From assembly GCA_964035545.1 (NCBI GenBank), contig OZ037770.1, positions 11,676,463-11,740,462 on the forward strand: a stretch of DNA of 64,000 bases. Reading direction: 5' to 3'. Position 1 is the first letter of the stretch, and each line of letters opens with the position of its first letter. Positions 12,006-56,400 of this stretch are shown here, in pieces. This stretch comes from Bugula neritina. Lineage: Eukaryota; Animalia; Bryozoa. The notes under the pieces were generated by a model that worked only from the letters and a program-made list of their open reading frames with translations, did no database searches and was not told the origin of the DNA. Made by a program: the position numbers and the translations under genes.

Positions 12006-14517
12006 CTAATAAAATCACTAATCTTTTATGTGGGTTTAAAGATTGAGCTTCTAACATGCAACTTTAAACATTGGATATCTCCTAATGCTGTTACTGTAGC
12101 CAGATTAGCAATTTTTATTTTGAGGTTATACCCACAAGAAAAAGAATATTTGCACGTTGTAACTTGGGACAATGTTTGGTGATTTCACTATAAATTATAG
12201 TGTGTTATACTTTTTACTTTGTTGAAATTATTGTAATTGTGTAAAATTTTAGAATACCTATTTTGATTGTACAAATATTTGATGAAATTGATAATAAATT
12301 TTGTTGTCTAAAATGAATATCTATTGGAAAAACTTTAAATAAAAAGATTACAAATGTCAGACAAATGCATGCAGCACTTATAGTAATGACAAACCTCCTA
12401 TGCTTCAAGTCAGCTTGAAATAGTTAATGCATTTCGAGTTTACGTTTTGCACAAATTTTAATTTGTATAACATTTTGCTACTACCAAAATATTGTGAATT
12501 TATAAGCAATAATAATATACTCGTGATACCCTTTAGTCAGTATACCATGCAACAGAAATCGTCTTATATTAAAAATGAATGATATTTGTTATGAATAATT
12601 GATGTGAAAAGATTCAATGAGCGAAACCCATGCAACAGAATGATGCAGAAAAGTGAGCATTTAGCAAATGTTCAAACAAGCCAGACAAAATTAAGCAAAT
12701 GCGAATCAAATTTTTCTCAAGTGATTTCTCTTGCTAATAAATTGGAAATTCTCAGGGGTAAAGCATTGTGCTGTCAGCTTAATTATTGAGGCTATACCTT
12801 ACACTGTGCTTAAGAATCTAGTTAAAATTAATCTTGTTAAAAGTATCTTGTTGCCAAGTAATGAGTTTAAGTGTTGTGAACACAATCTGGATTATTCAAT
12901 AAAAATCTATTATTATGAGTTAATGCTCTTGCTGGCCGAAACTCAAGTAATCGATTTTTGCGCAAGAATCCCGTACAATCTGTTTGGTCGTTTTATGCCA
13001 GAACAACTGCAGACTGCGTTAAAGCAAAGCTGTTCATTTTATGCAACTTTTTAGGGATGGATAAAGCACCACCACATGCCAGTTTATTAGATTATTTGTA
13101 GTTCTAATGTCAAGATGTGCACTGCAGGCCAACAGTTGTACTCTCTATTTTAGAATAGCCCAATGTCCTCAGAAAATATCAGTTTAAGATTTTCACTGTT
13201 TTCTCCCCAGTTCTCACATTAAAATAGTTTATAAACATGCTTTTCATGACTTATATTTTGTTATTTTTAACAATTTCATATTTTGCATCTTTTAAATGTT
13301 ATCTGTTTGACATTTATATGGTTTAAAACAGTTACCTCCAGTGTTAATATAATAGACCGAACGTTTTACAACATATCTCCATCACAGATTGCAAGTCAAT
13401 AGTTTTGTAAGTACATTTTGCAATTTCGCACTTCATGTTATAAAAACAGTCCAACAAAACTTCAGATGTTTAATTGAAAGCCCTAAATTGCACTATTTTA
13501 TTACATATTGTTCTCATCATTGACTTAATTATTACTATTTCGCACTGAAAGTATGCATTTGAATAGGCAGCCATGTTGCTATTCCTTCGCGTTTTGGCCA
13601 TTTTCCCTACTCTTTATCTCATTTCTTGTAATAATGTCTTCTTCATTCATATTTTGCTCCAACTATGGTGCCTATTCGTTGTACAATAATTTTTGGCCCA
13701 TATTGTTCTTGACATCCTGTAACATTTCTATTCATCTATATACATGCACCAGCACACACACATTGCTGTGTTCATACACTTTATATAGGATGTCATGTGC
13801 CAATATCTCTGGCAGCCATCTTGCTACATTCTCCTACTCTATATCATCTGTTAATATCAAGGTGGAGTACAAAAACATACCTGAAGGTTTCACTGCTGCG
13901 GAACTTGATGAACTGGCTGCAGTAGGATCAATAAAAGACAATGTAAACTTTATAACTGTAGTTTATCTTGTTATGTTTTCAGATGAATTGGTGTTGGCTG
14001 CAATCTCTTTTACTATAATAATCAGAAAATTAACTTAACGTTAAAATACTAATACATTCTACTTCTAGCGATTTTCCTATGATCATCTCATGCACAAGTT
14101 TCAAAATGGCCATCATTCACTCAATTCATCTGCTTTGATTGAACTGTTATCACATGTTTTATTATTTCATCTTGTTACTTGTTCGTATTATGTTACACTT
14201 TTGTTCCCAATTTAATTAATAACACTGGCGGAAGTGGGTACGTATTTTTACATGACAAAATAGTTTAATACATGTTTATATTGATGATATTGAAGGTAAT
14301 TTTCAAGTTGAAAAATTTTTAAAATTACTTTGCAATTCATGGAGATTTCTCTACGTATCCAGTTTTTTGTTTGATTGGGATAAACACGTTCAGCTAAGCA
14401 TGCAATTAAGACTGTAGCATGAAATAATACAGAGCTGAACTAATTTTTACTTTTTGAAGTCTAAGTATCACATTACCTGCTCTCTCTCTCTCATGTTTCA
14501 ACTTTGTCCATTTGTAG

Positions 14518-15238
14518 CTGAGAGACCCTCCGGCCGAGGGCATGTTTGTTCACGGGATCTATATTTGGGGTGCGTCATGGGAAAAGACGACCGGAGAACT
14601 CATTGACGCTCCTCCGAGACACAGCTGCACTGCACTTCCTGTTATACACGTCACCTGTTGGCCTCTTTCTGAGAAACCTTCAATGCAGGTAATGTGTTGC
14701 CTATCTGCCACTATGAATTTCAAAGAAGGGATAATCCCAAAAAGTTGACTTTATAGAATGTTTATTAGTTTTACTGACTCTAGTATTTTGTCAACAACTT
14801 TTGCAGCTAGCATAACAATCATTGTAATGATGTATTTAATTTTTCTTTTAATCTATTGTTGAAAAATCACATTCTTCAAATAATATATATGTGAGTCCAT
14901 TGTTGAGTTACTCACCATTGTTGGCTATACTGTACAAGACATTGTTATTCCTTTGCCAGGTTTGATATGGCATCAACTTAAAGCATGAATGTTGCTTAGG
15001 ATATTTTCCCACATTGTATATAGCCATAATATTACATATTCTAGTTGCTCTACAAGCTATCAGATTGTATTTATGCCTGTAGGATCCTGTGAAAGTCAAT
15101 GAGACCTATCAATGTCCAGTATTTCCCTCTCGTCTCACTGCTAGAGAACCCATATTTGAGATCGACCTTCGCCATGACAGTATACCAGCCACCCGATGGG
15201 CTCTTCGAGGCCTCAGCGCCACTGTCCGACCTTTCTAG
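14518..15238 (+). CDS. Duplicated last two exons of the dynein heavy chain (14518-14688, 15083-15238); orphan fragment or alternative 3' end
   Basis: Intact AG/GT sites, open frame and stop; protein identical to 9019-9783 except one G>S. Confidence 0.8.
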
Positions 15239-16372
15239 GTCACTGTGACACGTTTACTAGTAACCATCATGTTTTATGGTCTGCATATAGTATTATCCAA
15301 TATATTTGCCAGAATAATATGTCAGCTCATTTTTTCTTTCTAATATATAATTGTTTTAAATCCATCCGATGAACCAAAGATTTATTTTTCTTTTTAATGT
15401 CACACATTTACTAATAACATATTGATTTGATTTTAATTTATTTGTTACCATAAAATTAAATGTTTTCTCATAACCTTCTGTGTTACTAACAACTCACTGT
15501 TTTTAATTTTGGTGCATTTATTATTTTGTTCCGTCCACTTTTGCTGTGATTGTATATTATATAATAATGTTTGTATGAGTTTTTATTTGTTTTATCTATT
15601 TTGTTAATAAATTTATTTCATCAAAGTATCATACGTTTTGTATCTATTTATATTCAATTAACTAAAATACTACCAAATATTTGTCCATCTCCATAAGTGC
15701 AGATGTTTTAGAAGTTGCATTCTATACTTGTAGTATTTATTATCTCTGTTATAAAATCAAACCGTGATCTTGGAAATTCTAATAAACTGTACTGAGCTAT
15801 TATTATCTGGTGTAATGTAAGCACAAGTTTATAGATGTACTGTAGCATTGCCTAGTTTATTGTCAAGTAGACAAAGTAGTTGATTAGCTATGTGACATTC
15901 AACTTACACTGGTTGCTAAACTGGAAGATGCAGTGTCTGTAGCAAGCATACAATTAAAACTGCTACGTGTTCATTATCTGATGCTACAGCTCTATTTTCT
16001 ACTATCTAATAAACTTTTTCTTTAGTAGCCATCTAAAATGCTCAGCATATTTTGAAGAGTCAGTATTGGTTGTAAATTTAATGAGTAGTTGACCAAATAA
16101 CGATTTATAATAACTTATTTCACGTAAATTATGACATGTTAGATTACAAAAAAACACTTGACTAGGAAAATCATTAGATAGGTAAATTGTTTCACTGGAT
16201 AAACTTAAAAACGAAATTTAAAAATTGAGCTAGATGCCTAGGAAAATATGCTAAAGGACATATTGGAATAAAGTCTATGATATATAAGCTTGGAAAACTT
16301 AATAAACAGCTTGAAGAAGTCATAAAATATATATTCTGCAAGTTTGTGTTACAAACAGATAAGAAAACAGAC

Positions 16373-17314
16373 ATGGGAAATTCCAGCTCCGAGCTGATGG
16401 AAATCGAGCTTCTCACGAACGACACAGAGCGATGCTATTCTCCATTTACTCAGATTAGCGACACAGTCAACTGTTTGTCAATTGTTATAAACATTCTTCA
16501 TATACTTATGTTAAACCAGATGAAAGAGTTGAAAACTACCAAGTATTTCTTCATATTAGTTATTATAGGCTCATCCGATGTTCTCGCTGGCATTATTGGA
16601 ATACTATTTTATAGCTGTAAAATTAGGATTCTACTTCTACAACTCACAACTAAAGCCGCTTATTGGATCTTTACTGTCATAGTAAGACTTCTAGGATTTT
16701 CAGTCGTACTCCAGTATCTTGTCCTGTTGATGTCAAGTCTTGAAAGGTATCTAGCTGTTTGTCAACCTTATAAATACAGCACACATCCCTTGATCAACCA
16801 TCTGAAAGCTGTTTTTGGATTGGTCAGTGGCATTTTGGCTGTGTGTTTTGGTTTGTCAAGCATACAAATACAACAACTCCGTGAGAATAGGCTGAATGTG
16901 GTGTTTGTAGCACGAGTGAAACTTCTATGGATAATTTGGGTGGTTACCTTTATTTTGTCAATAATAATAACCGTTCTTCTCGTCAAGGTGTGGAAGGAGC
17001 TGAAAGGATTAACGCCCAATGACTCATCTGACAGACGGCTGATTCGATCAGCCAGCCAATATGTCATATTGACATATGTCATACACCAGTCAACCAATAT
17101 TCCAAACTTGGTACACTTTGTGAGCAAACTGTGTGGTATCCCACTAACGATATCCAACGTGCTTGAAGCTGTCGCAAGTATTGCCCGATCCAGCTACGGT
17201 ATTGCTAATGTATTTCTGTTCATCAGCTTCCATCCTGGTTACATTGTTAAAGTCAAGAAGTATTTCAAAGTGAGAACCTGCACTAGTTCTGTTGCGCCTG
17301 ACAATCTCAGTTGA
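16373..17314 (+). CDS. Intronless rhodopsin-family GPCR, copy 2 (313 aa)
   Basis: ATG at 16373; colinear with copy 1, about 25 amino-acid differences, ERY motif intact. Confidence 0.88.
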   Translation: MGNSSSELMEIELLTNDTERCYSPFTQISDTVNCLSIVINILHILMLNQMKELKTTKYFFILVIIGSSDVLAGIIGILFYSCKIRILLLQLTTKAAYWIFTVIVRLLGFSVVLQYLVLLMSSLERYLAVCQPYKYSTHPLINHLKAVFGLVSGILAVCFGLSSIQIQQLRENRLNVVFVARVKLLWIIWVVTFILSIIITVLLVKVWKELKGLTPNDSSDRRLIRSASQYVILTYVIHQSTNIPNLVHFVSKLCGIPLTISNVLEAVASIARSSYGIANVFLFISFHPGYIVKVKKYFKVRTCTSSVAPDNLS

Positions 17315-17382
17315 TTTAATGTCTGCGGAATCTGCTAGAAAAGGCATGAATTGAGTAAAGTGTATTAGTCATAAAACATAGC

Positions 17383-17488
17383 TGTAGTGTTGCGTTTACT
17401 CAGTAGTCCCTGTGGTGTAATGGTCATCACACTTGTTTGCAAGCCAGAGGTCTTGGGTTCAAATCCCAGTAGAGGCAAACGTTTTATC
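17383..17488 (+). mobile_element. tRNA-containing TG...CA element, 3' terminus eroded
   Basis: TGTAGTGTTGCGTTTACTCAGTAG + A box TGGTGTAATGG + B box GGTTCAAATCC + TTTT. Confidence 0.8.
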
Positions 17489-18571
17489 TTAACATCACTA
17501 ATCTTTTATGTGGGTTTAAAGTTTGAGAGCTTTTAGCATGCTGCAGCTCTAAACACTGAATATCTCCCAATTCTGTTACTGCAGCCAGATTAGCACTATT
17601 CATTTCCAGCTTATACTCACAAAAAAAGAATATTTGCATGTTGTAACTTTTGACAGTGTTTGGTGATCTCACTATAGATTATAGTGTTTCAAGTTTGGGA
17701 CTCTTTAATTTGCTGAGATTATTGTAGTTGTGTAAAATTTTAGAATACCTATGCATTTTTTATTGTACATATATTTGATGACATTGACAATAGGTGTTGT
17801 TTTTGAAAATAAATATTTATTGAAAAAAACCCCAATTAAAATGATTAAAAATGTCAGTCAAATGCATGCAGCACTTATAGCAGTGACAAATATTTTATGC
17901 TTTAAGTCTGCTTGGTTAAAACATATCTTGGGCCTGCAATTTGCACCAACTATAATTGTAAGCTATCAAGAAATAAATCATTTAGTATTTGTATAATATT
18001 TTCCTACTATCAGAAGATCTTAGAATCATGAGGCAATAATAATCATAATCTTGGCTAGTAAATTATGTTAATTGCATGAATGTTGGTCAAAGAAATCTGT
18101 TCTAATGAGCTATTAAAATACATTGAGAAAAACCAATATGTAAGCGAATCGTGCAGGAAAGTGGGCATCAAGCCATCGTTCAAATAATTTAGAGAAAAAA
18201 CTGCTAAACAAGCTCTCATTGGTGAAGTTATAAGGGGTCTGGCTTTGCGCTGTCAGTTTATTAACTGAAGCTATGCACTACAGAGAGTCCAATTTTCTTT
18301 TATATTTCAATCAAATAGAATTCAGCTGAAGTGCCGCAGAAAATCTTTTGAAAACATTATTTTGTTTTCAAGTAATGAGTTAACGTGCAGCTTTGATTTT
18401 TTTTTACTAAAATCTATTTCTATGAGTCAACTATCTTGCCAAGCAAAATTAACCTCCTTTAAGCTCACCAAATTCATGTTATCAATTTTTGTGGGACAAC
18501 TCCACGCAATATGATTGGTCATTTGTTGCCATAGCAACTGCAGACTACACTAAAGCAAAGCTTGTCGCACC

Positions 18572-18676
18572 TGTAGTGTAGAGTTTACTCAGTGGCCTCC
18601 GTGGTGTAATGGTAGCACACTTGCTTGCAAGCCAGAGGACTTGGGTTCGATTCCCAGTGGGGGCAATTATTTTACA
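18572..18676 (+). mobile_element. 105-bp tRNA-containing solo-LTR-like element, TSD GCACC
   Basis: TGTA...TACA termini, GCACC at 18567-18571 and 18677-18681, absent from the paralogous site at ~13031-13040. Confidence 0.9.
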
Positions 18677-19647
18677 GCACCATGCAACTTTTTAGGGATG
18701 AATAAAACGCCACATGCTAGTTTACTGTATCATTTATAGTTCTAAGGCCACGGTTGGCACAGGCCAGCAGCAGACTAGAGCTGATGGTTCAAGGAGTTGT
18801 ACTCTCCATCTTAGAATAATCTATTGTCCTCAAAATATGTCAGTTTAAGATTTTCACTATTTTATCCCCAGCTCTCACATCAATATGGTTTGTAAAGATG
18901 CTTTCATGATTTATGTTTTGTTTTTTTTAATAATTTCATATTTTACATCTTTTAAATGCATCTTTTACAGTTATATAATGCTTTAAAACAATTAACTCCA
19001 GTGTTTATATAATAGACCAAATGTTTTTTAACATATCTCCATCCCAGATTGCAAGTCAATAGTTTTGTAAGTAAGTTTTACAATTTTGCACTTCGTGTTG
19101 CAGAAAAATCCAACAAAACTTCAGACGTTTAATTAAAAGCCCTAAATTGCATAATTTTATCAGTTACTGTTCTCATCATTGGTTTCATCCTATTAATCTT
19201 TCGGGGTCAAAGGGCATCAAGTAATGATTAAGATAGTCACATGCACTACTGCTAGAGAGAAAGTTGCCACTTAATACTATGATTTTAATAAGTTTTAGTG
19301 AAGCAATAAAAATGTGCTTATTGTGTAGGGAGATAACTCTGGCTTCCCAAAAAAATCTATTCCTATTATGAAATGTTAGCTTTTGCATGCCTCCTTTTTG
19401 TGGAATTGACTAAAATTTGGAACTTGTTTTAGCTAAGCTATAAGCCTACTTTAAGTTTTATTAACTTATTAACTAGAAATTTATGAGCTGCGATTAGAAA
19501 AGCAATTGAACTGCTTAGTTGCTAAGAATTATTACAAAACTACTGCAATATCTTTCGCATTTTGGTTATGGAGTTATTATTCCCTCATTTGAAACCTCTG
19601 TATCACTGAATAGCACAGTTTTTCAATTTATCTATGTTAATAAAATA

Positions 19648-19837
19648 CAGCGCCCCCTTTGTATATTACTAATCGGCAGGTCCTAAAACCTCAATTAGTG
19701 ACATAGTAGAATACTGTTAAATTCCGCCATTTTGCCCTAATACGCATATACATAGGCCATGAAACAGGGTCCAAGCTTTTCTGGTGACCTGCGAGATTTT
19801 GTAAGAAATGAATTTGTGAGAGATTGAGGGAGCACTG
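19648..19837. mobile_element. MITE-like element with Tc1/mariner-type TIRs
   Basis: TA|CAGCGCCCCCT ... GAGGGAGCACTG imperfect TIRs; internal sequence (GACATAGTAGAATACT..GTTAAATTC.GCCATTT..AAACAGGG) shared with ~33333-33540. Confidence 0.65.
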
Positions 19838-20535
19838 CATGTAAAATGAGCATTTACAAAACATTTTTATTTCTAAATTGCACAGAAATTTTTAATTTTG
19901 TAAGCTTTATTATACTGGCATAGGAATATTCTGAAGTAATGCATATTTTGCAAAGGTAAAGTTATAAATAAAATGATATTTTATAAAATAAATTTTGCCA
20001 CAGCGCAAAAAATTTAATTGCTTAAAATAAATGCTAATAAAAAAGTTAAAAAAAATTAAATCTACATAACCTACCCATTACAGGGTATCAACTTACTAGT
20101 TTCAAAACTTTGCAGCTTGCAAGATTTGAAATATTGTTATACAAAATTCTGATAAAACGAAATATGTATTATTTATAAGTTACAAAAATATAATTTATAC
20201 AATTTTGAGGGAAGCTATTATGAGCTAGCACACTGTGTCTAGGAACAAAAAGGAATAAAGAACTTTTGAAGTAGGCGCATAGTTAGACCGGGCTAAAATC
20301 TGTTTGGTCAGTTTTGAGTTTAGTTTTTTCAGCATCTTTAGTAGTAGCAGAGTCATGTTTAATGCTTCCATCAGTCAAGTTGTTTTCCTATAAAATAAAG
20401 AAAATATCTGGAAATGTTTTTTTGTATTTTTCTAATGATTACCAAATCCTAAAACATATTGTTAATAAATAATATGATTCCAGTAAGAATATTACTGGCA
20501 ACTTTTTGTCAAATTGTAAATGGAATTAACCTTAC

Positions 20536-20641
20536 TGCAGTGTTGAGTTTACCCGGTGGTGCCGGTGGTGTAATGGTTAGCACGCCTGCTTACAACTCAG
20601 AGGTCTCGGGTTCAAACCCCAGTGGAGGCAAAACTTTTATA
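20536..20641 (+). mobile_element. 106-bp tRNA-containing solo-LTR-like element, TSD CTTAC
   Basis: TGCA...TATA (CA>TA) termini with CTTAC on both sides; A and B boxes intact. Confidence 0.85.
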
Positions 20642-21198
20642 CTTACTTACTGTGTTCAGAAGGGTTTATACAAATACAAATTGAAGGATAAAAATTGATG
20701 GCTTATTTGCAATCAGCAGAATTTTCAGAAAGTTTAGTTTACTAAGAAAGATTTTTGCTGATTTTGTGTTGTAAATAAGCGTAATATTGCAAAATATAGC
20801 TCTGATCAGTGTGAATCTCAGAATGAGAAAAAAAAATCAACACTAAAGATTTAGCTAACAATCTAAGAGACAACCTTTGAGAATGTTGTCTATTAGCCTA
20901 AAGTTAAGGGCAACAATCATGCTGGCAAACTAAATCATTTACAACCTCAAAGTCTAATATCGTTTAATTATCATAAATTATGTAACAGTTATCAAAATAT
21001 TTTGGCTAAATGAATAAGTTATATAACGATCAGTAATATGGTCATAAATTATTTTAATTTGCATAAAATCTATGCTCCCTTAACTTCAAACTCTGAGGAG
21101 AAAGATAACTTCTAAACAAAAACCAAATCCATATTAGTTGCAGGTCAATTTATAATACCATTGATAATTTTTATCTCAAAAGTACAACTCTGTTTTCT

Positions 21199-32800: not shown

Positions 32801-35800
32801 TCGCCTCATCAGAAGTTGGGAACCTAAAAAACATACTCTGTTTGAAAAGGTAGTGAGAGAAAATAAATAATTCTGTACATTTCAACAGCACCACTATAAA
32901 AATTACGTATCACATAGCTTTAGTCACCATAATTATACACATAACACATGGCGTTTACCACCATAACTGTACACATACCACATGGCGTTTACCACCATAG
33001 TGAGATACAAGGTAGAAAGACACATCGACCATCTCTGTACTCTGGAAAAATTACTCTTCTGAGGTCTTCTCGCCACAGACAACCAAAGATGGTCATCAAA
33101 CATCTTTGACTTTGTATTATCTTTGACCAAAGAAACAAAGTCTTTCCCTTCCTCCATGTCTTTGCTGAAGATCTCATGTCCATAGCAGAGAGTCTGTACT
33201 GGAGAGAGCCAGTCATTGCACAAGAATGTGTACCTAAAGTGCCAAGAAAAAAGCTATCAGCTATTATATGGTTTTTACAGAGCTTTAGTAAACTCTAACC
33301 AAGCATGATTGTCTAACCATTGTCAAAGTAAATGCTCCCTCCGTATCTCACTAAGTTAGGGGTTTCTAAATCTCAATTCATGACATAGTAGAATACTAGA
33401 TTTAACTCACGAATCTGTTAAATTCAGCCATTTGTCTTCTATACACATACATAGTAGGTCACAAAACAGGGGTTCAAGCCTGTCCCATAATTTATCAAAG
33501 TTTATGAAAAATAGATCCCTGAGACACAAAAGGTGCACAATGAGTAGTGGGTGCATCGATTTATAGTTTTAGTTAGTCAGATGCTATTTGAGTATAATTA
33601 TGGCAAGAGACAGTAGTAGTAGCAACGCCTTTTGCCATATAGGGTAAGCATTGCATCAATCAACCTACCAATGGCAGCATTAACCTCAGCTCACTATACC
33701 TGCCTACCAACTAAACAAACTGACCTCTTCTGTAGTTCCGTATCCACTATTGAGATCCACTCAATATAGAGACTATCTCTATCATCTCTGGCTCTGGTCC
33801 AAAGGTGAATATGAGTTACACTACCGATATCCTCCTTAGCTGTCACTACCAGGTTGGTCACAGAGTTTGGTTGGAAGTTCTGAATAAGATGTTTATTGAA
33901 ATATTAGCTATAGTAATCTATCACAACATTTACTTCATTGCTACTTACTAAATAGTAATTAGTATGCTATTCTAAAAACCTACGTCTCTCACATAATTTT
34001 ACAAACTTTATAAAATTGCATTAGTTAGTATTTTAACATATAACTTAGCTAGAAGCAGCTGTGATCATGTCTTTAGAGTGCTGACTAAAAAATATTTATA
34101 TACTTCTGATTTAAATCAAACATTATTGAAAATACAATAAATTTGTTGCTTTTTTCCACATAATTAGACTCACTTTTCTTCTTCCATCTTCTAATTCTAT
34201 TGGAGTCGTTTTTCCATTTTCTCCATAAAGAACACAGAATAGTTTAGTGTCAAATTCTTTACTCGACACACTTCCAATGCTGACGGTAAGTTGATAAATG
34301 AACTTGTCATCTGGCTCATTGTGGATCACTGGCAAGAATTCCCACTATAAAACAGAAAGGTTAATATATCATTATGTTATTCATGACTTTTATTGTAACA
34401 ATGAAAATATATGTTAATCTGTAATGACAAATCTACAAGTTTCGGATAGCTATTTGAAATTAAACTGGTAGCTGTAGTGATGAGTTTACCCAGTGTTCTT
34501 GTGGTGTAATGGTTAGCACATTTGCTAGCAAGCCAGAGATTTCGAGTTCGAATCCCAGTGGGGGCAAATATTTTTCAGTAGCTAATTATAGATGTAAGTC
34601 AAAATTGAACTAGAAAACAATTGCAGCCATTCAAGTGAAAAATTTGCAGTGATTTTCAGTATTTGATTTATTTTATTACCACAGAGCTTGCTGTAGATAA
34701 ACACTATTGCCATATTACAGTGTTGCTCAAATAGATTTGATACTGTGTGATACAAACTCTGGGAATATATTTAAAAGTGTGTTTATGCAATTATCAATAA
34801 TTAAGGAAACCCAATATCGATAGGATAGTCAAAACAAAACAAAATTCATAAGAAAAGCTGCTGTATCCAGTAACTGCTCACTCACCCTCTTGTAGTCTCT
34901 AACATCCAGTCTTCTGATTGGGATGAGGAGAATGAAGTACAGACCAGCTATGAGACAGACTAGAATCAGAACATAAGGATTCTCTGCCGTCTTGGCTCCC
35001 AGGTCATCAAATACTTCATCAAAGTCTATAGTGTTGGGAGGAATGAACAGGTCTGATGTCATGGATCCCATGAAGTTAGATTTGAATACCACTTCTTCCC
35101 CACTTGAGGAGGGGTCAATCTAAAACAGGGTTGAAAATATAGTAATGAAAATTTATGAAAAAAAACTCACACAAGTTCATAGTCACTACCTCTGTGAGAC
35201 CTACTGATCGAAGGGGTTTTTGTTAACTCAAGCTAAGGACTTATTCGATTATGATTGGATGCTTTTCCTAACATCACCAATGGTCTTTAATGTCCCAAAA
35301 CCTAGGACCTACTAAGCCAGGTTTCTAAACACTAAACTATGGCTGTTCCAACTAAATTTTTTTAAAAATTTGCTATAAAGAAGCTAAACTAAGTTTGACA
35401 ACATGTTAAAGCAAACCTTAACCATTAGTTTGCTGTTAAGTACATGAGAGCTAGTTGAACCTTTTCAAACTTACTTCCACTTCATCCGAAGGCACCCAAG
35501 CTTTGATGGTCTCATTCCAGACTCTTGGAGCATAAACAGCGGCTCCAGATGAGGAGCCTGAACCTGTGGCTCTCTTCTTACGACTTCCTTCAACCTGATT
35601 GGCTGAGAGGTGAACGTAGAATATTCCAGTTCCTGTCACTCGCCCATTTATAAAAATAGACAGCTCATCTAGAATAAAAAATGTTTTATCTTGTAGTGTT
35701 AATTGGCTTTATCTCTCTCTCCCTCTCTTTCTCTCTCTCACACACGCACCTACACACGCACACACGCACACGCACACACGCATGCTTGGCGCTTGCACAC

Positions 35801-38800: not shown

Positions 38801-41800
38801 GTTATTGAGGTAGTAACAGTAGGTGTAGTGGTAGGGGTAGTAACATTAGGTGTAGTGCTAGGGGTAGTAACATTAAGTGTAGTGGTAGGAGTAGTGGCAT
38901 TAGTTTTAGCTGTTGAAGTGTTACTGGAAAATGTTGTAGTGGCTTCAGTGCCATTACAGATTATTCTGGCCGAGGGTGAAGTGGTGCTGCATGGCTCACT
39001 TTTCACATAGCTTGTTGGTGTTGTAGAGACCATGGTTGTGTACACATCTGCAATATATATGAATTCACAAGACTGTAGGTTTGCACAGATACAGATCTGT
39101 GTATGCACTTGTCTTGTTGATAAGAAATATGTTGTTATACACAAAACAAAAAGACTTAGGCCCCGCATTTTGTGTGGGACAACCTGCTAGAATGTAGACT
39201 CACTATTCTGCCTTCTCGAGTAGAGCAGCAAATCATGGGCTTACTCTACATTGCCAAGTAAGTTGATGTAGCACAGGCTCAAATTCTTTGAAGTGAAGAG
39301 TATTTTTTAGCACACAGCATGTAGCTATTAGTAATACTTGTGCATATTTTTAATATTTCATTTTGTAAATTGCAAAATATAATTAGCGTTCAAGGAAACT
39401 CAGCAGGCTTATAGTGCTTATAGTAGTAATGGTGCCCAGGGTGCTCATGGTAATTATGGTGCTCATGGCACCCAAGGGGCACTGGATGTCTAACTAAATT
39501 GAGCATTGAGGTGCAGAAAGTTCTCCCACAAAGCTATTGTTTTAAACCATGCAACTGACTCTGTACTCACAATTGTAGTAGAAGTAACAGTTGCCAGGAA
39601 CAGCTGGATCTAGCATCTTATATCTTACATAATCAGAGTCTGGATTTCCTTCTTTACCATTACTGAACATTCTGTAACATCAACTCAATAAATTTAACTT
39701 ACTTCCTAAATATAGTCATTAGCAACCCCTATAATTAAGCAAGGTTTTCTATAGATTGGCAAAATTTATGTTTGTAAAAGACTTCAGTTTTTATGAAAAG
39801 GTTTTGAAAATATTGTAACAGCTTTTATTTGAGAATTTTTATAGGTTAATATTTTTAATTTAACTTGATAAAAAGCATTACAATTACTTAGCGGTGCCAT
39901 TTTGCAAAACTTGAAGCTTTTAAAATTGGGGAAATAAATGACGCTTACCCAGTGCCAGGATTAAAAGAGAAGATATGAGTTGACAGCAACTCAAAGATTT
40001 CCAAAGCAGACGTAGAATCCTTAGCTGAGAGTATTCCTCCACCATTGATTGACTGGAAAGAATAATGCTGTATGACGTATGTGATGGGAAACGATAGTGA
40101 AATTAAAAAACTAATTATAACATTATTATAAGCAAAATATCAAGTTGACAAATGAATAAGCTAACATATCTTTATTATTCAAAAGCTTAACTTATACAGA
40201 TTTTAAAATTTTATTTCATGTTGTTCAACTCTTCATAAAATACCCAAGCTCAACCAGCTTGAAAAAGCTTTATTCATGCAAAAATTATTTTTCTTATCTG
40301 TTCATATATATATAAGTGTAGCAAATTTTACATACCAAAACACAAACATAAACACAGAACACACGCGCGCGCGCACGCACACACACACACACACACAAAT
40401 ACTAAGTTTGTAGCGTCATACCTTAGGGGCAGCCAGTGCACACACATCTGATTCATTATTCAAGTTGTAATAAGCCCTGTCTATGCAGTAGTATCCAGAT
40501 ATAGAGACTCCAGCACAGGAACTATCTGAAAAGACAAAAATTAAGTAATCACTAAAAAGTATGTCGTCTACTAAGAGCAAAATTGCAGAAATTAACATGT
40601 AGCCCTTTAACTCAACAACTATACCAACTTGCAAAAAATAGTTATCATTTGATCCCATATAATGCTCAACTTGAAAATATATTAACATTTTAATAAACTA
40701 TAAGACTACTAAGGTTAAAACGATATTCACTACAAAAAAAAAAATGAAAAACAACTTAATGCAATGCTGAAAAGTTTGACACCTCGAAACAAAGCTTTGA
40801 GTTTAATTAAGATGTGGTGTGCTTATTATTAGATGAAGATTTCGTAAAAACTGAGACATTAACTGTAAACCATGTGCTAGAAAAAGATTGTATTCCTATT
40901 TAATGATACAAGAAAAACAAAAGTGTCATATTAATTAGGGAAATATAAAGTGCTGAATCAGGTAGGCCTACTAATGATATTCCAGTTTCCAAAAAAATAT
41001 TCATTTCATTTTTACAAAATATTTTTACATATTTGTTGGTTAGATTGAGTAAGTTTAAATTTTTGAAATTCCATTCAATGGGTGACAGAAAGTATACTAT
41101 GTGATGTGAAGCGGGTTTCTATCTACTATATTGCTAAGTCATGCTAGAACAGAATTAACCTTTATATGATCCAGTTGGCGTTGTTCGGTCAGTAGACTGA
41201 CTATCTTCAGTTGTTAATGCATCAGTAGACTGGGAATCTTCAGATGTTAATACATCAGTAGACTGGGAATCTTCAGTTGTCAATGCATCAGTAGACTGGG
41301 AATCTTTAGATGTTAATGCATCAGTAAATTGACTATCTTCAGTTGTTAACGCGTCAGTAGACTGGGAATCTTCAGTTGTGAATTCATCAGTAAACTGACT
41401 ATCTTCAGTTGTTATTGCATTAGTAAACTGACTATCTTCAGTTGTCAATGCATCAGTAGACTGGGAATCTTTAGATGTTAATGCATCAGTAAATTGACTA
41501 TCTTCAGTTGTTAACGCGTCAGTAAACTGGAGATCTTCAGTTGTGAATTCATCAGTAAACTGACTATCTTCAGATGTTATTGCATCAGTAAACTGACTAT
41601 CTTCAGTTGTCAATGCATCAGTAGACTGGGAATCTTTAGATGTTAATGCATCAGTAAATTGACTATCTTCAGTTGTCAACGCGTCAGTAGACTGGGAATC
41701 TTCAGTTGTGAATTCATCAGTAAACTGACTATCTTCAGTTGTTATTGCATTAGTAAACTGACTATCTTCAGTTGTCAATGCATCAGTAGACTGGGAATCT

Positions 41801-44800
41801 TTAGATGTTAATGCATCAGTAAATTGACTATCTTCAGTTGTTAACGCGTCAGTAAACTGGAGATCTTCAGTTGTCAATGCATTAGTAAACTGAAAATCTT
41901 TAGATGTTAATGCATCAGTAAATTGGAAATCTTCAGATGTTAATGCATCAGTAGACTGGGAATCTTCAGTTGTTATTGCAGTAGTAAACTGACTATCTTC
42001 AGTTGTCAATGCATCAGTAGACTGGGAATCTCTAGATGTTAATGCATCAGTAAATTGACTATCTTCAGTTGTTAACGCATCAGTAGACTGGGAGTCTTCA
42101 GTTGTGAATTCATCAGTAAACTGACTATCTTCAAATGTTATTGCATTAGTAAACTGACTATCTTCAGTTGTCAATGCATGAGTAGACTGGGAATCTTTAG
42201 ATGTTAATGCATCAGTAAATTGACTATCTTCAGTTGTTAACGCGTCAGTAAACTGGAGATCTTCAGTTGTGAATTCATCAGTAAACTGACTATCTTCAGA
42301 TGTTATTGCATTAGTAAACTGACTATCTTCAGTTGTCAATGCATGAGTAGACTGGGAATCTTCAAATGTTAATTCATCAGTAAACTGACTATTTTCAGAT
42401 GTTATTGCATTAGTAAACTGACTATCTTCAGTTGTTAACGCGTCAGTAGACTGGGATTCTTCAGCTCCCAATGCATCAGTAGACTGGGAATCTTCAGATG
42501 TTAATGCGTCAGTAGACTCGAAATCTTCAGTTGTTATTGCATCAGTAAACTGGGAATCTTCAGATGTTAATTCATCAGTAGACTGGGTATCTTTAGATGT
42601 CAATGCATCAGTAAACTGACTATCTTTAGATGTCAATGCATCAGTAGACTGACTATCTTCAGATGTTGGTACATCAGTAAACTGGAAAGCTTCAGATGTT
42701 AACGCATTAGAAGACTGACTATCTTCAGTTGTTAACGCGTCAGTAGACTGGGAATCTTCAAACGTTAATGCATCAGTAAATTGGGAATCTTCAGATGGTA
42801 ATTCATCAGTAGACTCGGAATCTTCAGTTGTTGGTACATTAGTAGATTGAATCTTCTTAAAGGTTATTGCATCAGTAGATTTAGGTGTTAATAAATTCCC
42901 TGTGAATAATGCACTTGTCTGATAATTGTGAGTGGTCATCTTTTATAATAAAAAAATTAACTCAAGATAGTCAGCAAATTTCTGATTTGAATTTTTTAAT
43001 GCTATCCAAAACAAGGATAGGAAAAAAGTGACAGAAAAAGTGTCAACTGATCAGACTGAAAAACTCACCCGATAAAGCGTTAGTTGTTGCATCGCTGGTG
43101 GATGTTGACAAACTCCCTGTAAACATGAAGTGAATTGTTGTGAATACATGCTCTATTGCTTCAGCAAATAGCAACATATAGCTCGTACTACAAGCTATTT
43201 CATGTTTGTTAAAAATTGGATTTTCAGAAATAGAACCACCAAAATGCTGAATAGTGCATCTGCTTCTAATCAAGACCAAAAATGTGTCTGGACAGGGTAT
43301 ATGGTTGATTTTAATATAACTTCATTGTTTATACTTTATCTACCCTTTATCTACCCTTTATCTACCCTTTATCTAACCTTTATCTACCCTTCATCTACCC
43401 TTTGTTTATCCTTTATCTACCCTTTGTTTATTCTTTATCTACCCTTTATCTACCCTTTATCTAACCTTTATCTACCCTTCATCTACCCTTTGTTTATCCT
43501 TTATCTACCCTTTGTTTATTCTTTATCTACTCTTTAGTTACCCTTTAGTTACCCTTTTTATCTACCCTTTATCTACCCTTTGTTTATCCTTTATCTACCC
43601 TTTAGTTACCCTTTTTGTCTACCCTTTATCTACCCTTTATCTAACCTTTATTTAATTTTTATCTACCCTTTATTTACCCTTTATCTACCCTTTTTATCTA
43701 CCCTTTAGTTACCCTTTATCTACCCTTTATCTACCCTTTATCTACTTTTAATCTACCCTTTATCTACCCTTTAGTTACCCTTTATCTACCCTTTATCTAC
43801 CCTTTATCTATAACCCTTTATCTACCCTTTATCTGCCCTTTATCTACCTTTTATCTACCCTTTTTCTACCCTCTGTCTACTCTGTGTAGCTATATAGCTA
43901 CATAGCTACAAGTGTGATGTCACTTTCAACAAGAAATAGACGGGGCTGAAATAAACAGGGGTTGTTTGTTTATATTGTATGAATCAAAAGATAATTAAGA
44001 TGAAAAACCAAAGTGACAAAAAATGCGTCAACTAGTTAGACTTCAAGACTCACCTGAGTCTGATAAAGCGTTGGTTGCTGCATCACTTGCGAGAGCATCT
44101 GAAGAGGTTGATGAGCTCACTGCAAAAAATGTAGTAGATTATTGTAAATATTATATGCTGTTTTGTTTTAGGAGAAAGTAATATATAGTTCATAATATGA
44201 GCTATGTTACATCGGTTAAAATTTGCTGCTTTTAGAAATAAAAAACAGCAGAATATTGACTAATATAGGGGCATTATTGCATAGCTGTGGAAATACACAT
44301 TAAAAGTTATTAAAATTTGCTATTAAAAGAGTCACAGAAATTTCATCAAGAGATGAAAGAGGAAAATTCTACAACAGAATTTTTTGAAGCTTTGCATTAC
44401 AGTTAAGATAAATAAATAATTATTAACCATCTAACAATAGATTTCAACATTTTTAATCTATGCAACTATTTTTTTAGAATATAAAATTAAACACCTTTCA
44501 GTTATATGTGTAAAAGTATTATTATGACTTGACTCCATGTGGATAATCTATTGATAAATAGTATTATAATAATTGAATACAGCTTAAAAATTTTTACAAA
44601 TAATTGGGATACCATGTAAAGCATCTAAAGCACTTTTGGAAATTCTAATGTGTAATATTAAGAGGTCTTATTTATTCTGGTAATTTATTTATAATTGACT
44701 GAAAATCTTCTAATTCTTGTACAAAAATTGTTAAAAGCGTATATTAAGATTACAACACCTCTCCATAAGTAAAAACAAAGTGACCAAATTTAGAGAAAAT

Positions 44801-53457: not shown

Positions 53458-56400
53458 TTATAGCAAATCTAAATTATTCTTGTCACTCTTAAATTGATCT
53501 TCGGCACTTCCAGGATCATCTTGTTTTTCCTCTTCATTGCTTATCTGCAAAAAAACATAATTTTTAACAACTTTATACATGCATTTATTGCAGCATAAAT
53601 TTAATAAAAGCTCGAATAAAATGCCAAATTAATATTTTTGGCTTATGGGTAGATTTTAATACAAGTATATTAATTAGTTAAAAAATTTTATATTTTAATT
53701 TCTAAATTTTAAAAATATATTTTATCACAGCATTTTGTCACTATTGTTTAATTTAGTGCCTGATATACGTAAGTAGTCCATAAGCTAACCAATAGCAAGA
53801 AATCTATAAATGAAATTATAACATATATAAGCTAAGATTCACCAAGAAAATAATATGTCTGTTCAATACACAGTTAAGGTTAGAGAAATAACCATAAACC
53901 TTGAATATTGAACTTAAGAGAACTGACAAAATACAATTAAAACAACATTTTGATAGATGGAAACATATCAAAAGTGTTTTGTAAGAAGAAGACTGTATAA
54001 GCACATGTACACAATATATAGACAATGGGAGAAGTTACGTATCAGTAAAACATACAAGAATATTCATTGGTAAAAACAAATTAATATATATTTTACCCTG
54101 GTACAGCTGTTTAATCTATAAATTGATTGAAATGGTAATCAAGCTAAATCAAAACATAATTAGCTTTAGGTCAAACAATTGAAATACTCTTGGTCATGCA
54201 AAGCATTGACAGCAAATTGTTTAAAGCAGAAAGTTTTTAGCAGGTGAAATTATCATTGAATAACTTTGATTTCACATGGTGTCTGTATTTAAAAGTAACT
54301 TCTTTTATTATTTCAAGTAGAAAAATTGCTTTGAAAGCAATTTTAGACTTTTGAAAAAGGCCAGAAACGTTTAAAATCTTTTTGCCACACAGAGCAACAC
54401 TGACGGTCAAGTCAAACCAAGCAGGTCAAGTCAAGCTACAATCGAGTTGAACATTGGATCTGTAGTGTTGAGTTTACCCAGTGGTCCCCGTGATGTAATT
54501 ATTTTTCAAGATCATGTTTAAGTCTATTCAAGTCAAGACTCAAATAAATTCATCACAATTTAATTTGATTTACAAGCTTTAATCAAACAGATGACAATAA
54601 ATTAATTACAGACATATGACATGCAGTCTAATCTCTCACTATTCATTACTATACCTCTGTCATGCTGTTTACAAATATAGCATGTAGCTTATACCTGGGC
54701 CATGTTGTGCCATCTTTTAGCCATTTCATCTGCTATATTCTCCGTAATAGACTTGACCATTTCACCGGTCTCATCAATACCACTCAGTAGGTTCTTTACC
54801 ACCGGGGCCATGGCTAGATTGACATCCAGATTCACATCCAGAGTGTGCCGGGCTTTTGATACAGTCTTCCTAGGAGTGACCTTTGCTGCTATTCGGTATT
54901 TAACCTCTTGACCTTTGGGATGGCACATGCATCGAAGATTCTCAGCAAAACAGGTCACGCTGTTATAAATAAATAGAACAACATACATATAAAAAGTGTT
55001 TTACCTATTTTTAAATTGTTTAACTTCAATAATCAAAGTATTCTGGCAATGACCTTGACATTGTGAACTGACTAAGTTGGAAAAGATATTCCAAAAGCAT
55101 GTTATAATTATTATTTCTTGTTGGTATCAAGTTAGGTCAAGTAGAATAAGTAAATCTTAATTTTCCTGGTAATAAAAATAAAATTCAACTGATAGAAACC
55201 TTGAAATATTTTATAATGTTATTAATGAATTAACTGTTTCCTAAGTTAAGTGAATAAAGTCAAATTGATAAGAGAAATGGGGAAACATTATTTTGCTGCT
55301 ATCAGAAAAGCATCCTAAAAAATATAATTTGTTACAGACTTGAAACAACCAATCAATTTTAGTATGTCATTAATTCAGCCAGTAAGAGCGTATTCTGCTT
55401 TGTGCAGAGCGTACTGTTACTGAATAATCCTTCTTATTTGGTGCTTTACGCACCTCTGTTTGCAGAAATAAGTTTAACAAAGAGAGCTTTATGTCTCTTA
55501 CCTGTTATAAGACAGGGTCCAGGGTCCATCATCTCTTTTCACAAAGACATTACAGTAATCTCTTTTCTTGCTATCTTTAAATGGTAGACAGCATTTGAAG
55601 GGCTTAGCTAAAGGCATCTCAGACTTCAGTTCTATCACGTGACTGGCAAACAGGTTTGTAGTGTACGCCTGCAACATTTCAATAAAGGTTTTATTAAGAG
55701 AACATAATATATATTTATATTCAGAGAAATGACTTTCTTTGGGAAATGTATTTTTTAATTCAACGTATATTAAAACTATTTTTAAAATATTTTTAGGAAT
55801 ATAGCAAATAAGACTTTGTCACAATTTGAATAAAATTTATGAAAATAATAATATGGTCACTATATAGTACTAGAAAGGGAGCAGCCATGGTTTATGGGGG
55901 TTAAAGCGTTTGTATTGTAGACACTAAGTTATGGGTTCAAACCTGACAAAAGGCTCTTGGTGATGTTAAGACAAGCATCCAGTCATAATTGCTCCTGTGC
56001 CCTGTCTGAATAACTCCTTAACCCACTTTAACAAAATATTCTTTCCACCAGGGTTTCTCACAGAGATAGCGACTGTAAACTTGCGCAAGTTTTTACTATA
56101 CAGTACTAGAAGTGTGAAACACATTTTAGTACTTCGTTCATGGCATGTAAAACAGCTGTCAGTTGCATATTAAAAGTACTACATATCTATTTTTCAAGTT
56201 CATGTTAATGCTTGAAAATATGTAGACATTTGAAAATTATGTTTTTTTTGCATTTTTGCATTCAAACTAAATAGAAGTGAATTCTTTTGAATGCATATTA
56301 CTTGACGATCTTTATTTAATAAAACAAATTACAGCATAAAATAAATATTTTTTTGTTTAATGCTTAATCAACAAGATCTAATGTTCTGTGAAGAGATACA

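What the first reader, a model, noticed from the sequence alone, without database searches (positions are those of the whole stretch)
18567..18681. A 105-bp mobile unit that is a tRNA-like Pol III gene packaged between TG...CA ends with 5-bp TSDs (solo-LTR/TRIM-like, not a SINE)
Seen: three full copies of almost identical length, each with a different 5-bp direct repeat: 18572-18676 (GCACC), 34473-34577 (GTAGC), 20536-20641 (CTTAC). Further eroded copies lie at 17383, 11920 and 54461. Each has a conserved ~22-nt leader (TGTAGTGTTGAGTTTACCCAGT) upstream of the tRNA part, an A box TGGTGTAATGG, a B box GGTTCRAATCC, a pairable acceptor stem and T arm, a degenerate anticodon arm, and an internal TTTT just before the terminal CA. 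The 18572 copy is absent from the paralogous site in the duplication (~13031-13040), whose length matches one TSD, although that empty site has diverged in sequence. Established: SINEs begin at the Pol III +1, end in a simple tail and have variable TSDs, whereas TG...CA plus a fixed 4-6 bp TSD is the integrase signature of LTR elements. TRIMs with small-RNA-derived LTRs exist (Cassandra with 5S rRNA; from memory, the Helenus group with tRNA-like LTRs, whose animal members I recall having 4-bp TSDs - to be verified). Inference: these are solo LTRs of a tRNA-LTR TRIM family with 5-bp TSDs, or a one-unit integrase-mobilised element that spreads Pol III promoters/TFIIIC sites; six copies in 64 kb implies a high genomic copy number.
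Basis: partly seen in the sequence, partly recalled or inferred. Interest (0 to 1): 0.82.

Follow-up and report, generated by a model that had tools for sequence, protein, structure and literature searches.

The report
Solo LTRs of a tRNA-like mini-retrotransposon
The 105-base repeats are leftover end-pieces (solo LTRs) of a 330-base non-coding retrotransposon whose ends are built around a tRNA look-alike. This type, "Helenus", was published in 2024, but here it sits in an animal phylum not listed for it and has a 5-base rather than 4-base insertion footprint.

Summary
The window holds five independent insertions of a 105-106 bp unit, plus one copy made by a segmental duplication. Each unit has a 23-nt leader, a 71-nt tRNA-like module with intact A and B boxes, a T4-5 run, TG...CA ends and 5-bp TSDs.

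Elsewhere in the same 216-Mb metazoan genome, two such units flank a ~120-bp internal region. That region begins with a 12-nt primer-binding site and ends in a purine tract, and the whole ~330 bp lies inside one 5-bp TSD. So the window copies are solo LTRs of a Helenus-type TRIM ("TRIMp3", Kojima 2024).

- **Copy number:** at least 634 LTR 5' ends and 118 PPT/3'-LTR junctions, giving roughly 3.4 solo LTRs per full element.
- **Recent activity:** one full copy has identical LTRs.
- **Differences from published animal Helenus:** 5-bp TSD instead of 4-bp, a host said to be a bryozoan, and a PBS complementary to nt 1-12 of the host's tRNA-Phe.
- **Likely helpers:** the same PBS, 5-bp TSD and TGT...ACA ends occur in four young autonomous PR-RT-RNaseH-IN families.

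Earlier notes of this scan found the same family on other pieces of this genome (s1-481206, s1-444358, s1-444306). Pol III transcription and the priming mode are inferred, not shown.

The parts
18567..18571 (.). Left copy of the 5-bp target-site duplication GCACC of the 18572 LTR
   Evidence: Read directly. It is identical to 18677-18681.
18572..18676 (+). Solo LTR (105 bp) of the young subfamily, with TGT...ACA ends
   Evidence: It is 96.2% identical to the LTRs of the full element in L054, whose two LTRs are identical to each other.
18572..18594 (+). 23-nt leader upstream of the tRNA-like module (U3-like part of the LTR)
   Evidence: Conserved within the subfamily. It is the most divergent LTR segment between subfamilies.
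18595..18665 (+). 71-nt tRNA-like module with A box, B box, pairable acceptor stem and T arm, and a degenerate anticodon arm
   Evidence: Rfam RF00005 at 49.3 bits against a gathering score of 29. ARAGORN returns tRNA-???. The D-arm matches this genome's tRNA-Gln genes.
18666..18676 (+). Trailer holding the only T4 run of the LTR (terminator-like), then the terminal ACA
   Evidence: T runs of 4 or more occur only at LTR positions 99-104, in 54 of 57 LTRs. This segment is invariant between subfamilies.
18677..18681 (.). Right copy of the TSD GCACC
34473..34577 (+). Solo LTR (105 bp) of an older subfamily ending TTTTTCA; TSD GTAGC at 34468-34472 and 34578-34582
   Evidence: It is 87-90% identical to the best genomic copies.
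20536..20641 (+). Old solo LTR (106 bp), starting TGC and ending TA; TSD CTTAC at 20531-20535 and 20642-20646
   Evidence: It is 79-85% identical to other copies.
17383..17488 (+). Old solo LTR that predates the local segmental duplication; its TSD has decayed
   Evidence: Rfam tRNA scores 40.3 bits at 17406-17477.
11920..11998 (+). Eroded, 3'-deleted paralogue of the 17383 LTR, copied by the segmental duplication
54461..54508 (+). Internally deleted LTR (first 39 nt plus last 9 nt); flanks GGATC/AGATC
13036..13040 (.). Paralogous site without the 18572 LTR: 5 nt (ATTTT) in place of TSD-LTR-TSD
   Evidence: Pairwise alignment.

Best explanation
**What it is.** The 105-bp units are solo LTRs. 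They were left by LTR-LTR recombination of a ~330-bp non-coding LTR retrotransposon, a TRIM of the Helenus / TRIMp3 kind.

**Anatomy (shown).**
- Each LTR has a 23-nt leader, a 71-nt tRNA-derived module, an 11-nt trailer with the LTR's only T4-5 run, and TGT...ACA ends.
- The tRNA-derived module has a tRNA-Gln-like D arm, consensus A and B boxes and a spoiled anticodon arm.
- The full element is LTR, then a 12-nt primer-binding site, ~95 nt, a purine-rich tract, then LTR. It inserts with a 5-bp target duplication.
- The architecture, the 5-bp TSD, the PBS/PPT, the copy number and the co-resident autonomous families with the same PBS, ends and TSD are all shown by the sequence.

**How it likely works (inferred).**
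- RNA polymerase III starts at the tRNA-like module of the 5' LTR, sometimes reads through that LTR's weak T4-5 terminator, and stops at the T run of the 3' LTR. That would make R the tRNA-like part and leave U5 only about 3 nt long.
- The ~305-nt RNA is then reverse transcribed and integrated in trans by proteins of co-resident autonomous PR-RT-RNaseH-IN elements.
- The primer is a 12-nt 5' piece of tRNA-Phe.
- Solo LTRs may still act as dispersed Pol III / TFIIIC sites.
For: - **TSD length.** 14 of 25 solo LTRs have perfect TSDs at exactly 5 bp and none at 3, 4, 6, 7 or 8 bp; 18 of 25 match with at most one mismatch. Of 10 full elements, 7 have perfect 5-bp TSDs around the whole unit.
- **Termini.** 55 of 57 LTRs start TG and 50 of 57 end CA; lengths run 101-109 bp.
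- **Full elements.** Copies of 327-369 bp with two LTRs, a PBS and a PPT were found. One has 100% identical LTRs. A tandem LTR-int-LTR-int-LTR array occurs in L045.
- **Primer site.** The 12-mer right after the LTR is the exact complement of nt 1-12 of all five tRNA-Phe-GAA genes found. CA plus this 12-mer occurs 103 times in the genome, against 0 for the control.
- **Candidate helpers.** Four autonomous families of 4.3-5.3 kb carry the same PBS at the same position, TGT...ACA ends and 5-bp TSDs, with LTRs 99.5-100% identical. One shares 21 of 22 nt with the TRIM across the LTR end and PBS.
- **tRNA module.** It scores 43-49 bits on Rfam tRNA.
- **Conservation between subfamilies.** The tRNA core, the trailer with T run and CA, the PBS and the PPT are conserved, while the leader diverges.
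- **Census.** 634 LTR 5' ends against 118 PPT/LTR junctions.
- **Window content.** The window holds no internal region, so its copies are solo LTRs or fragments.
- **Definition.** The kind is defined in PMC10886601.
Against: - There are no RNA data, so Pol III transcription, read-through of the 5' LTR terminator and the R/U5 boundary are all inferred.
- The absence of other T4 runs is matched by an absence of A4 runs, so it does not discriminate between strands.
- The PBS pairs with the 5' end of a tRNA, not the 3' end. That needs a cleaved tRNA with a 3'-OH at nt 12, and I found no published precedent.
- The helper family is not resolved. LTR-end and PBS similarity points to the L066/L068 type, while PPT similarity points to the L067/L069 type.
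- 7 of 25 solo LTRs lack a recognisable TSD.
- The paralogous 'empty' site differs at all five positions.
- The copies sampled are the best-scoring ones, not a random sample.
Confidence: 0.88

Rival explanations
1. An ordinary tRNA-derived SINE mobilised by a LINE.
For: It has a tRNA-like Pol III promoter, is short and has a high copy number.
Against: A 23-nt leader lies before the tRNA part and there is no A-rich or simple-repeat tail. The TSD is fixed at 5 bp and the ends are TG...CA. Paired copies flank a PBS and a PPT under one TSD.
Confidence: 0.01
2. A non-autonomous cut-and-paste DNA transposon (MITE) of a superfamily that makes 5-bp or 4-5-bp TSDs, such as Transib or Ginger.
For: It has a 5-bp TSD and TGT...ACA termini.
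Against: There is no terminal inverted repeat beyond 3-4 nt. The units occur as direct repeats around a PBS/PPT core. The same PBS, ends and TSD are found in elements encoding RT and integrase.
Confidence: 0.02
3. The single 105-bp unit is itself the mobile element, integrated as one LTR by integrase, rather than arising by recombination of full copies.
For: Solo units outnumber full elements by about 3.4 to 1, and each has its own TSD.
Against: A single unit lacks a PBS and PPT, so it cannot be copied by the LTR route. Identical TSDs on both sides are what intra-element LTR-LTR recombination leaves. The LTRs lie only ~120 bp apart, and tandem arrays show the family recombines.
Confidence: 0.04
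4. The identity is the same (a Helenus-type TRIM), but the replicating RNA is made by Pol II or by read-through from neighbouring genes. On this view the tRNA-like module is kept for another reason, such as packaging, nuclear handling or decoy function, and not as the promoter.
For: A T4-5 terminator lies in the 5' LTR ahead of the PBS, so a pure Pol III transcript should mostly stop before the internal region. There is no expression evidence.
Against: The A and B boxes match consensus and are conserved between subfamilies whose leaders diverge. The youngest subfamily has only T4, a weak terminator. From memory, the related Cassandra is reported to be transcribed from its Pol III promoter; this is stated in PMC10886601 section 4.1.
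Confidence: 0.15

Closest known systems
Helenus (TRIM with tRNA-derived LTRs; 'TRIMp3'), Kojima 2024, PMC10886601
   Same: It has two short LTRs, each carrying a tRNA-like sequence with A and B boxes. It has a short non-coding internal part with PBS and PPT. Solo LTRs with TSDs and tandem arrays both occur. The tRNA is non-functional. Its size (105/120/330 bp) lies within the published range of 311-1263 bp; Helenus-2_TeGr, for example, is 104/130/338.
   Different: - All published animal families have 4-bp TSDs and are linked to Gypsy helpers; this one makes 5-bp TSDs.
- Bryozoa is not among the listed phyla.
- The PBS pairs with tRNA-Phe nt 1-12, not with a tRNA 3' end or anticodon loop.
- The paper's sequence file holds neither this A-box core nor this PBS, although wrapped lines make that check imperfect.
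Cassandra (plant TRIM with 5S rRNA-derived LTRs) and Ajax (nemertean, 5S-derived)
   Same: These are TRIMs whose LTRs carry a Pol III promoter from a small RNA gene. Ajax makes 5-bp TSDs in an animal.
   Different: The promoter source is 5S rRNA (type 1), not tRNA (type 2). Ajax uses a tRNA-Leu 3'-end PBS.
tRNA-derived SINEs (SINE2)
   Same: They have a tRNA-like internal Pol III promoter, are short, non-coding and high in copy number, and confound tRNA prediction. Here, 2 of the 3 Rfam tRNA hits in this window are LTRs.
   Different: SINEs begin at the Pol III start, end in a tail, have variable TSDs and use LINE machinery. None of these holds here.
Copia/Ty5-type priming from an internally cleaved tRNA
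   Same: The primer is not the tRNA 3' end but a 5' portion ending inside the tRNA (described in PMC10886601 section 3.6).
   Different: There the cut is in the anticodon loop and the helpers are Copia. Here complementarity stops at nt 12 in the D arm, and the helpers have the PR-RT-RNaseH-IN order.

Membership tests
Helenus / TRIMp3 | TRIM architecture: two LTRs flanking a short non-coding internal region under one TSD | tested here: met
   Ten full elements of 329-369 bp (one of 739 bp) were found elsewhere in the genome, 7 of them with perfect 5-bp TSDs. The window itself has only solo LTRs.
Helenus / TRIMp3 | tRNA-derived sequence with A and B boxes inside each LTR | tested here: met
   Rfam tRNA scores 40-49 bits. 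The D arm equals that of the genome's tRNA-Gln genes.
Helenus / TRIMp3 | PBS just downstream of the 5' LTR and PPT just upstream of the 3' LTR | tested here: met
   A conserved 12-mer abuts the LTR CA and a purine-rich tract abuts the 3' LTR TG. The PBS is atypical: it is complementary to the tRNA-Phe 5' end.
Helenus / TRIMp3 | Animal members: 4-bp TSD and Gypsy-like PBS partners (an empirical rule of the 2024 paper, not part of the definition) | tested here: not met
   The TSD is exactly 5 bp. The genome is metazoan, with multiple Wnt loci. The partner elements show neither Ty3/Gypsy-type nor BEL-type Pfam signatures.
Helenus / TRIMp3 | Active Pol III transcription from the LTR | not testable with these tools
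   No RNA or ChIP data are available. This is also unproven for published Helenus.
tRNA-derived SINE | Element begins at the Pol III start, has a 3' A-rich or simple-repeat tail and variable-length TSDs | tested here: not met
   There is a 23-nt leader, the ends are TG...CA, and the TSD is fixed at 5 bp.
MITE / DNA transposon with 5-bp TSD | Terminal inverted repeats; no PBS or PPT | tested here: not met
   Only TGT/ACA is inverted. Direct-repeat pairs with PBS and PPT exist.
Cassandra / Ajax | 5S rRNA-derived promoter in the LTR | tested here: not met
   The Rfam hit is to tRNA, not 5S.

The most novel reading that the evidence does not exclude
This animal Helenus lineage and a clade of young autonomous PR-RT-RNaseH-IN elements share a way of starting reverse transcription from a 12-nt 5' fragment of tRNA-Phe, cut in the D arm. 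The TRIM's LTR is a complete Pol III unit (leader, tRNA-like R, terminator), so U5 is only about 3 nt. That would be a Pol III-driven retroelement using a priming mode I could not find described.
Probability: 0.4. Interest if true: 0.75.

Novelty: new variant of a known kind. Interest (0 to 1): 0.45.

Why it matters
- **Range of Helenus.** It extends the recently defined Helenus/TRIMp3 class to another animal host. Earlier scan notes identify that host as a bryozoan; I verified only that the genome is metazoan.
- **The 4-bp rule.** It breaks the published rule that animal Helenus makes 4-bp TSDs and rides on Gypsy elements.
- **Annotation.** Hundreds of LTRs score as tRNA genes. In this window 2 of the 3 Rfam tRNA hits are LTRs, so tRNA counts for this genome will be inflated unless the family is masked.
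- **Biology.** More than 600 dispersed intact A/B-box units are candidate TFIIIC/Pol III sites.
- **Priming.** The unusual primer site links a non-coding parasite to a set of apparently active autonomous elements. It offers a clean system for asking how a 5' tRNA fragment could prime reverse transcription.

Tried and rejected
- **SINE and MITE readings.** Rejected on termini, TSD length and the existence of PBS/PPT-bearing full copies.
- **Tf1-type self-priming.** No sense-strand copy of the 12-mer's complement occurs in the TRIM or in the four autonomous elements' LTRs.
- **Priming by the element's own tRNA-like module.** It has no complementarity to the PBS.
- **T-run asymmetry as a Pol III signature.** It is uninformative, because A4 runs are absent too.
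- **Metagenome scan for the LTR core.** 0 hits.
- **Literature searches.**
  - Searches for priming from a tRNA 5' end returned nothing relevant.
  - 'DUF7047' returned no paper.
  - 'TRIMp3' returned only the 2024 paper as relevant.
  - Bugula transposable elements returned nothing on this family.
- **Classifying the helper Pol.**
  - Pfam gives only weak RT and IN hits plus DUF7047.
  - The RT-RNaseH part has no PDB sequence match even at E = 10.
  - A profile of the four Pols finds retroviral integrases first and Ty3 only weakly.
  - The Atlas lists unnamed DUF7047 clusters.
  - The superfamily therefore stays open, and I ran no further search on it.
- **Tool output not used.** align_proteins printed a majority consensus of the four Pols by default. 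I did not use or copy it.
- **Not available here.** Repbase and Dfam cannot be reached with these tools, and neither can other bryozoan genomes.
Full report
**Observation.** The three full copies are exactly as described: 18572-18676, 34473-34577 and 20536-20641, each flanked by a perfect and different 5-bp direct repeat. BLAST of the units against the window finds the further copies at 17383 and 54461, and the 11920 copy is seen by eye and through the duplication. A 19-nt A-box core matches 3 times against 0.02 expected. Rfam and ARAGORN call 18595-18665 a tRNA at 49.3 bits with an unreadable anticodon, and Rfam also calls 17406-17477 at 40.3 bits. So two of the three tRNA hits in this window are these units; the third is a real tRNA-Pro at 751-822.

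Three corrections apply.
- The 11920 copy is the paralogue of the 17383 copy inside a segmental duplication (9546-12417 vs 15001-17914, 89.8% identical). There are therefore five independent insertions, not six.
- The 54461 copy is an internally deleted LTR that keeps both termini (54461-54508), with flanks GGATC/AGATC.
- The 20536 copy ends TA, not CA.

**The genome.** The window is G000:C6:11676463-11740462 of a 216-Mb assembly with 33% G+C in the window. It carries many Wnt loci, so it is metazoan. Earlier notes of this scan name it Bugula neritina, a bryozoan. I did not verify the species.

**What the unit is.** A search of the whole genome gave 924 first-look candidates, and 37 of the 40 scored hits cover the query to within two bases of both ends. 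In several fetched loci two same-strand copies lie about 225 bp apart, start to start. Cutting these out shows LTR (105 bp), internal region (117-157 bp), LTR (105 bp), with one 5-bp duplication around the whole.

The internal region begins, directly after the LTR's CA, with a conserved 12-mer. It ends in a purine-rich tract directly before the 3' LTR's TG. That is the anatomy of a terminal-repeat retrotransposon in miniature. The window contains no internal region at all, so its copies are solo LTRs and LTR fragments.

**Statistics.** These come from 57 LTRs with both ends in the fetched loci and the window.
- 55 start TG, 50 end CA, and lengths run 101-109 bp.
- Of 25 solo LTRs, 14 have perfect flanking repeats at exactly 5 bp and none at 3, 4, 6, 7 or 8 bp. 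Eighteen match with at most one mismatch. Shuffled partners give 0.67 on average.
- Of 10 full elements, 7 have perfect 5-bp TSDs.
- LTR pairs within elements are 85-100% identical. One 330-bp copy (in L054) has identical LTRs and another is 97%, so the family was active recently.
- A tandem LTR-int-LTR-int-LTR array occurs in L045.
- Genome-wide, the LTR 5' end motif occurs 634 times and the PPT/3'-LTR junction 118 times, both at up to 2 mismatches with controls of 0. That gives roughly 3.4 solo LTRs per full element.
- The window copies differ in age. The 18572 copy is 96.2% identical to the L054 LTR, the 34473 copy is 87-90% identical to its best matches, and the 20536 and 17383 copies are about 80-85%.

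**LTR anatomy.** The LTR has four parts.
- *Leader:* a 23-nt leader.
- *tRNA-like module:* 71 nt, at LTR positions 24-94. It has a good acceptor stem, a T arm with one mismatch and a collapsed anticodon arm. Its D arm/A box is identical to that of the genome's own tRNA-Gln genes, and overall it is closest to tRNA-Gln among the four tRNAs I compared (48 of 66).
- *Trailer:* 11 nt, holding the only T4-5 run.
- *End:* the terminal CA.

A sister subfamily of 322-333 bp, also with 5-bp TSDs, has a different leader. It keeps the tRNA core, the trailer, the PBS and the PPT. That is the pattern expected if those parts are functional in the master copies.

**Primer site and helpers.** The 12-mer after the LTR is the exact reverse complement of nt 1-12 of the five tRNA-Phe-GAA genes found in this genome. 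CA plus the 12-mer occurs 103 times, against 0 for the control. Of the first 30 sites, 21 are this TRIM family or its sister subfamily. Nine belong to four other LTR elements.

Fetching those four shows the following.
- The elements are 4.3-5.3 kb long, with LTRs 99.5-100% identical, and carry gag and pol frames.
- They have TGT...ACA ends, 5-bp TSDs, the same PBS abutting the LTR, and G-rich PPTs.
- The Pol order is protease, RT, DUF7047, RNase H, integrase, which excludes Copia.
- The four Pols are 37-77% identical to one another.
- Neither the LTRs of these elements nor the TRIM carries the sense 12-mer, so Tf1-like self-priming is excluded.
- The TRIM shares 21 of 22 nt with the L066 type across the LTR end, the PBS and five further bases. 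By eye, its PPT is nearer the L067/L069 type.

The helper is therefore among these families but is not resolved. Their superfamily also stays open. The RT has no PDB sequence match. The profile's best PDB hits are retroviral integrases, with Ty3 weak. The Atlas neighbours are unnamed DUF7047 clusters.

**Mechanism.** The following is shown: a TRIM with tRNA-like LTRs, integrase-type ends and TSDs, a PBS and PPT, abundant solo LTRs, and co-resident intact elements with matching cis signals. The following is inferred.
- Pol III initiates at the tRNA-like module.
- The T4-5 run of the 5' LTR is sometimes read through, and the 3' LTR's T run ends the RNA. R would then be the tRNA-like part, and U5 only the last ~3 nt.
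- Helper RT and IN act in trans.
- A tRNA-Phe piece ending at nt 12 is the primer.

The terminator ahead of the PBS is a real difficulty for a pure Pol III model, and there are no RNA data. The lack of other T4 runs is not diagnostic, since A4 runs are absent too.

**Comparison with the known.** Kojima 2024 (PMC10886601) defines Helenus as TRIMs with tRNA-derived LTRs. It reports them in fungi, one plant and six animal phyla; Bryozoa is not among them. In that paper, fungal and plant families make 5-bp TSDs and every animal family makes 4-bp TSDs. Animal families are linked to Gypsy through shared 3'-end tRNA PBSs, and fungal ones to Copia, often through anticodon-loop priming. The present element meets the definition and fits the size range, but differs in TSD length, host phylum and primer site.

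The paper's sequence file contains neither this A-box core nor this PBS, and no Bugula or Bryozoa entry. Line wrapping makes that check imperfect, and I could not consult Repbase or Dfam. No other paper in the held library mentions TRIMp3 in this sense.

**Prior notes of this scan.** The same family was already reported on other pieces of this genome. It appears as a 321-bp element (s1-481206) and a 314-bp hybrid (s1-444358). It also appears as tRNA-like cassettes with TG...CA ends and 5-bp TSDs (s1-444306). The tRNA-Phe 5'-end primer site was reported in s1-441634.

**Loose ends.**
- *The 'empty' site.* The unfilled paralogous site (13036-13040) has the right length but differs at all five bases. 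The 18572 LTR is much younger (about 4% from an element with identical LTRs) than the duplication (flanks 77-85% identical). The insertion therefore post-dates the duplication, and the 5-nt difference remains unexplained.
- *Local clustering.* Five independent insertions in 64 kb, all on the + strand and three within 3.3 kb, exceed the genome-wide density of about 0.2-0.3 per window. Extra copies also appear in the flanks of several fetched loci. This clustering is only partly explained by ascertainment.

**Verdict.** The kind is known. This family is a new variant, being an animal family with a 5-bp TSD, an unusual PBS and unclassified helpers. It has already been noted elsewhere in this scan.

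Noticed in passing
L066:931-5194 (+), L067 (-), L068 (-), L069:298-5600 (+); genome places G000:C2:25607000-25616900, C1:14642500-14652400, C2:20498500-20508400, C1:12509500-12519400: Four small autonomous LTR retrotransposon families of 4.3-5.3 kb, with LTRs 99.5-100% identical. They have intact gag and pol frames and a Pol order of PR-RT-DUF7047-RNaseH-IN. They also have 5-bp TSDs and a PBS complementary to tRNA-Phe nt 1-12. Their superfamily is unresolved: the RT has no PDB sequence match, and the integrase is nearest to retroviral integrases.
   Followed up: partly
window 9546-12417 vs 15001-17914, and 12939-13522 vs 18470-19181: A local segmental duplication (~90% identical, falling to 77-85% further on). 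It carries a 322-345-aa open frame with no Pfam match (10883-11851 and 16277-17314) and an old LTR copy.
   Followed up: partly
window 13036-13040: The paralogous site lacking the 18572 LTR has 5 nt (ATTTT) that differ at every position from the TSD (GCACC), in otherwise alignable flanks.
   Followed up: partly
window 17383-20641 and the whole window: Five independent insertions of one family lie in 64 kb, all on the + strand, three of them within 3.3 kb. Additional copies sit in the 1.5-kb flanks of several fetched loci (L006, L019, L026, L045, L064). This may reflect an insertion or retention hotspot.
   Followed up: no
L045 (reverse complement) 1168-1840: A tandem array LTR-int-LTR-int-LTR of the TRIM, immediately followed by an inverted solo LTR.
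   Followed up: partly
L046, L048, L050, L064 (e.g. G000:C2:32334-35347): A sister TRIM subfamily of 322-333 bp with a different LTR leader. It has the same tRNA core, trailer, PBS, PPT and 5-bp TSD.
   Followed up: partly
window 751-822: A genuine tRNA-Pro(AGG) gene at 54.6 bits on Rfam. It is the only one of the window's three Rfam tRNA hits that is not an LTR.
   Followed up: no
window 41155-42939 (-): A 594-aa open frame with only weak, low-complexity-like Pfam matches (PLC-beta_C and SnoaL_2, with no significant stretch). Its nature is unknown.
   Followed up: no
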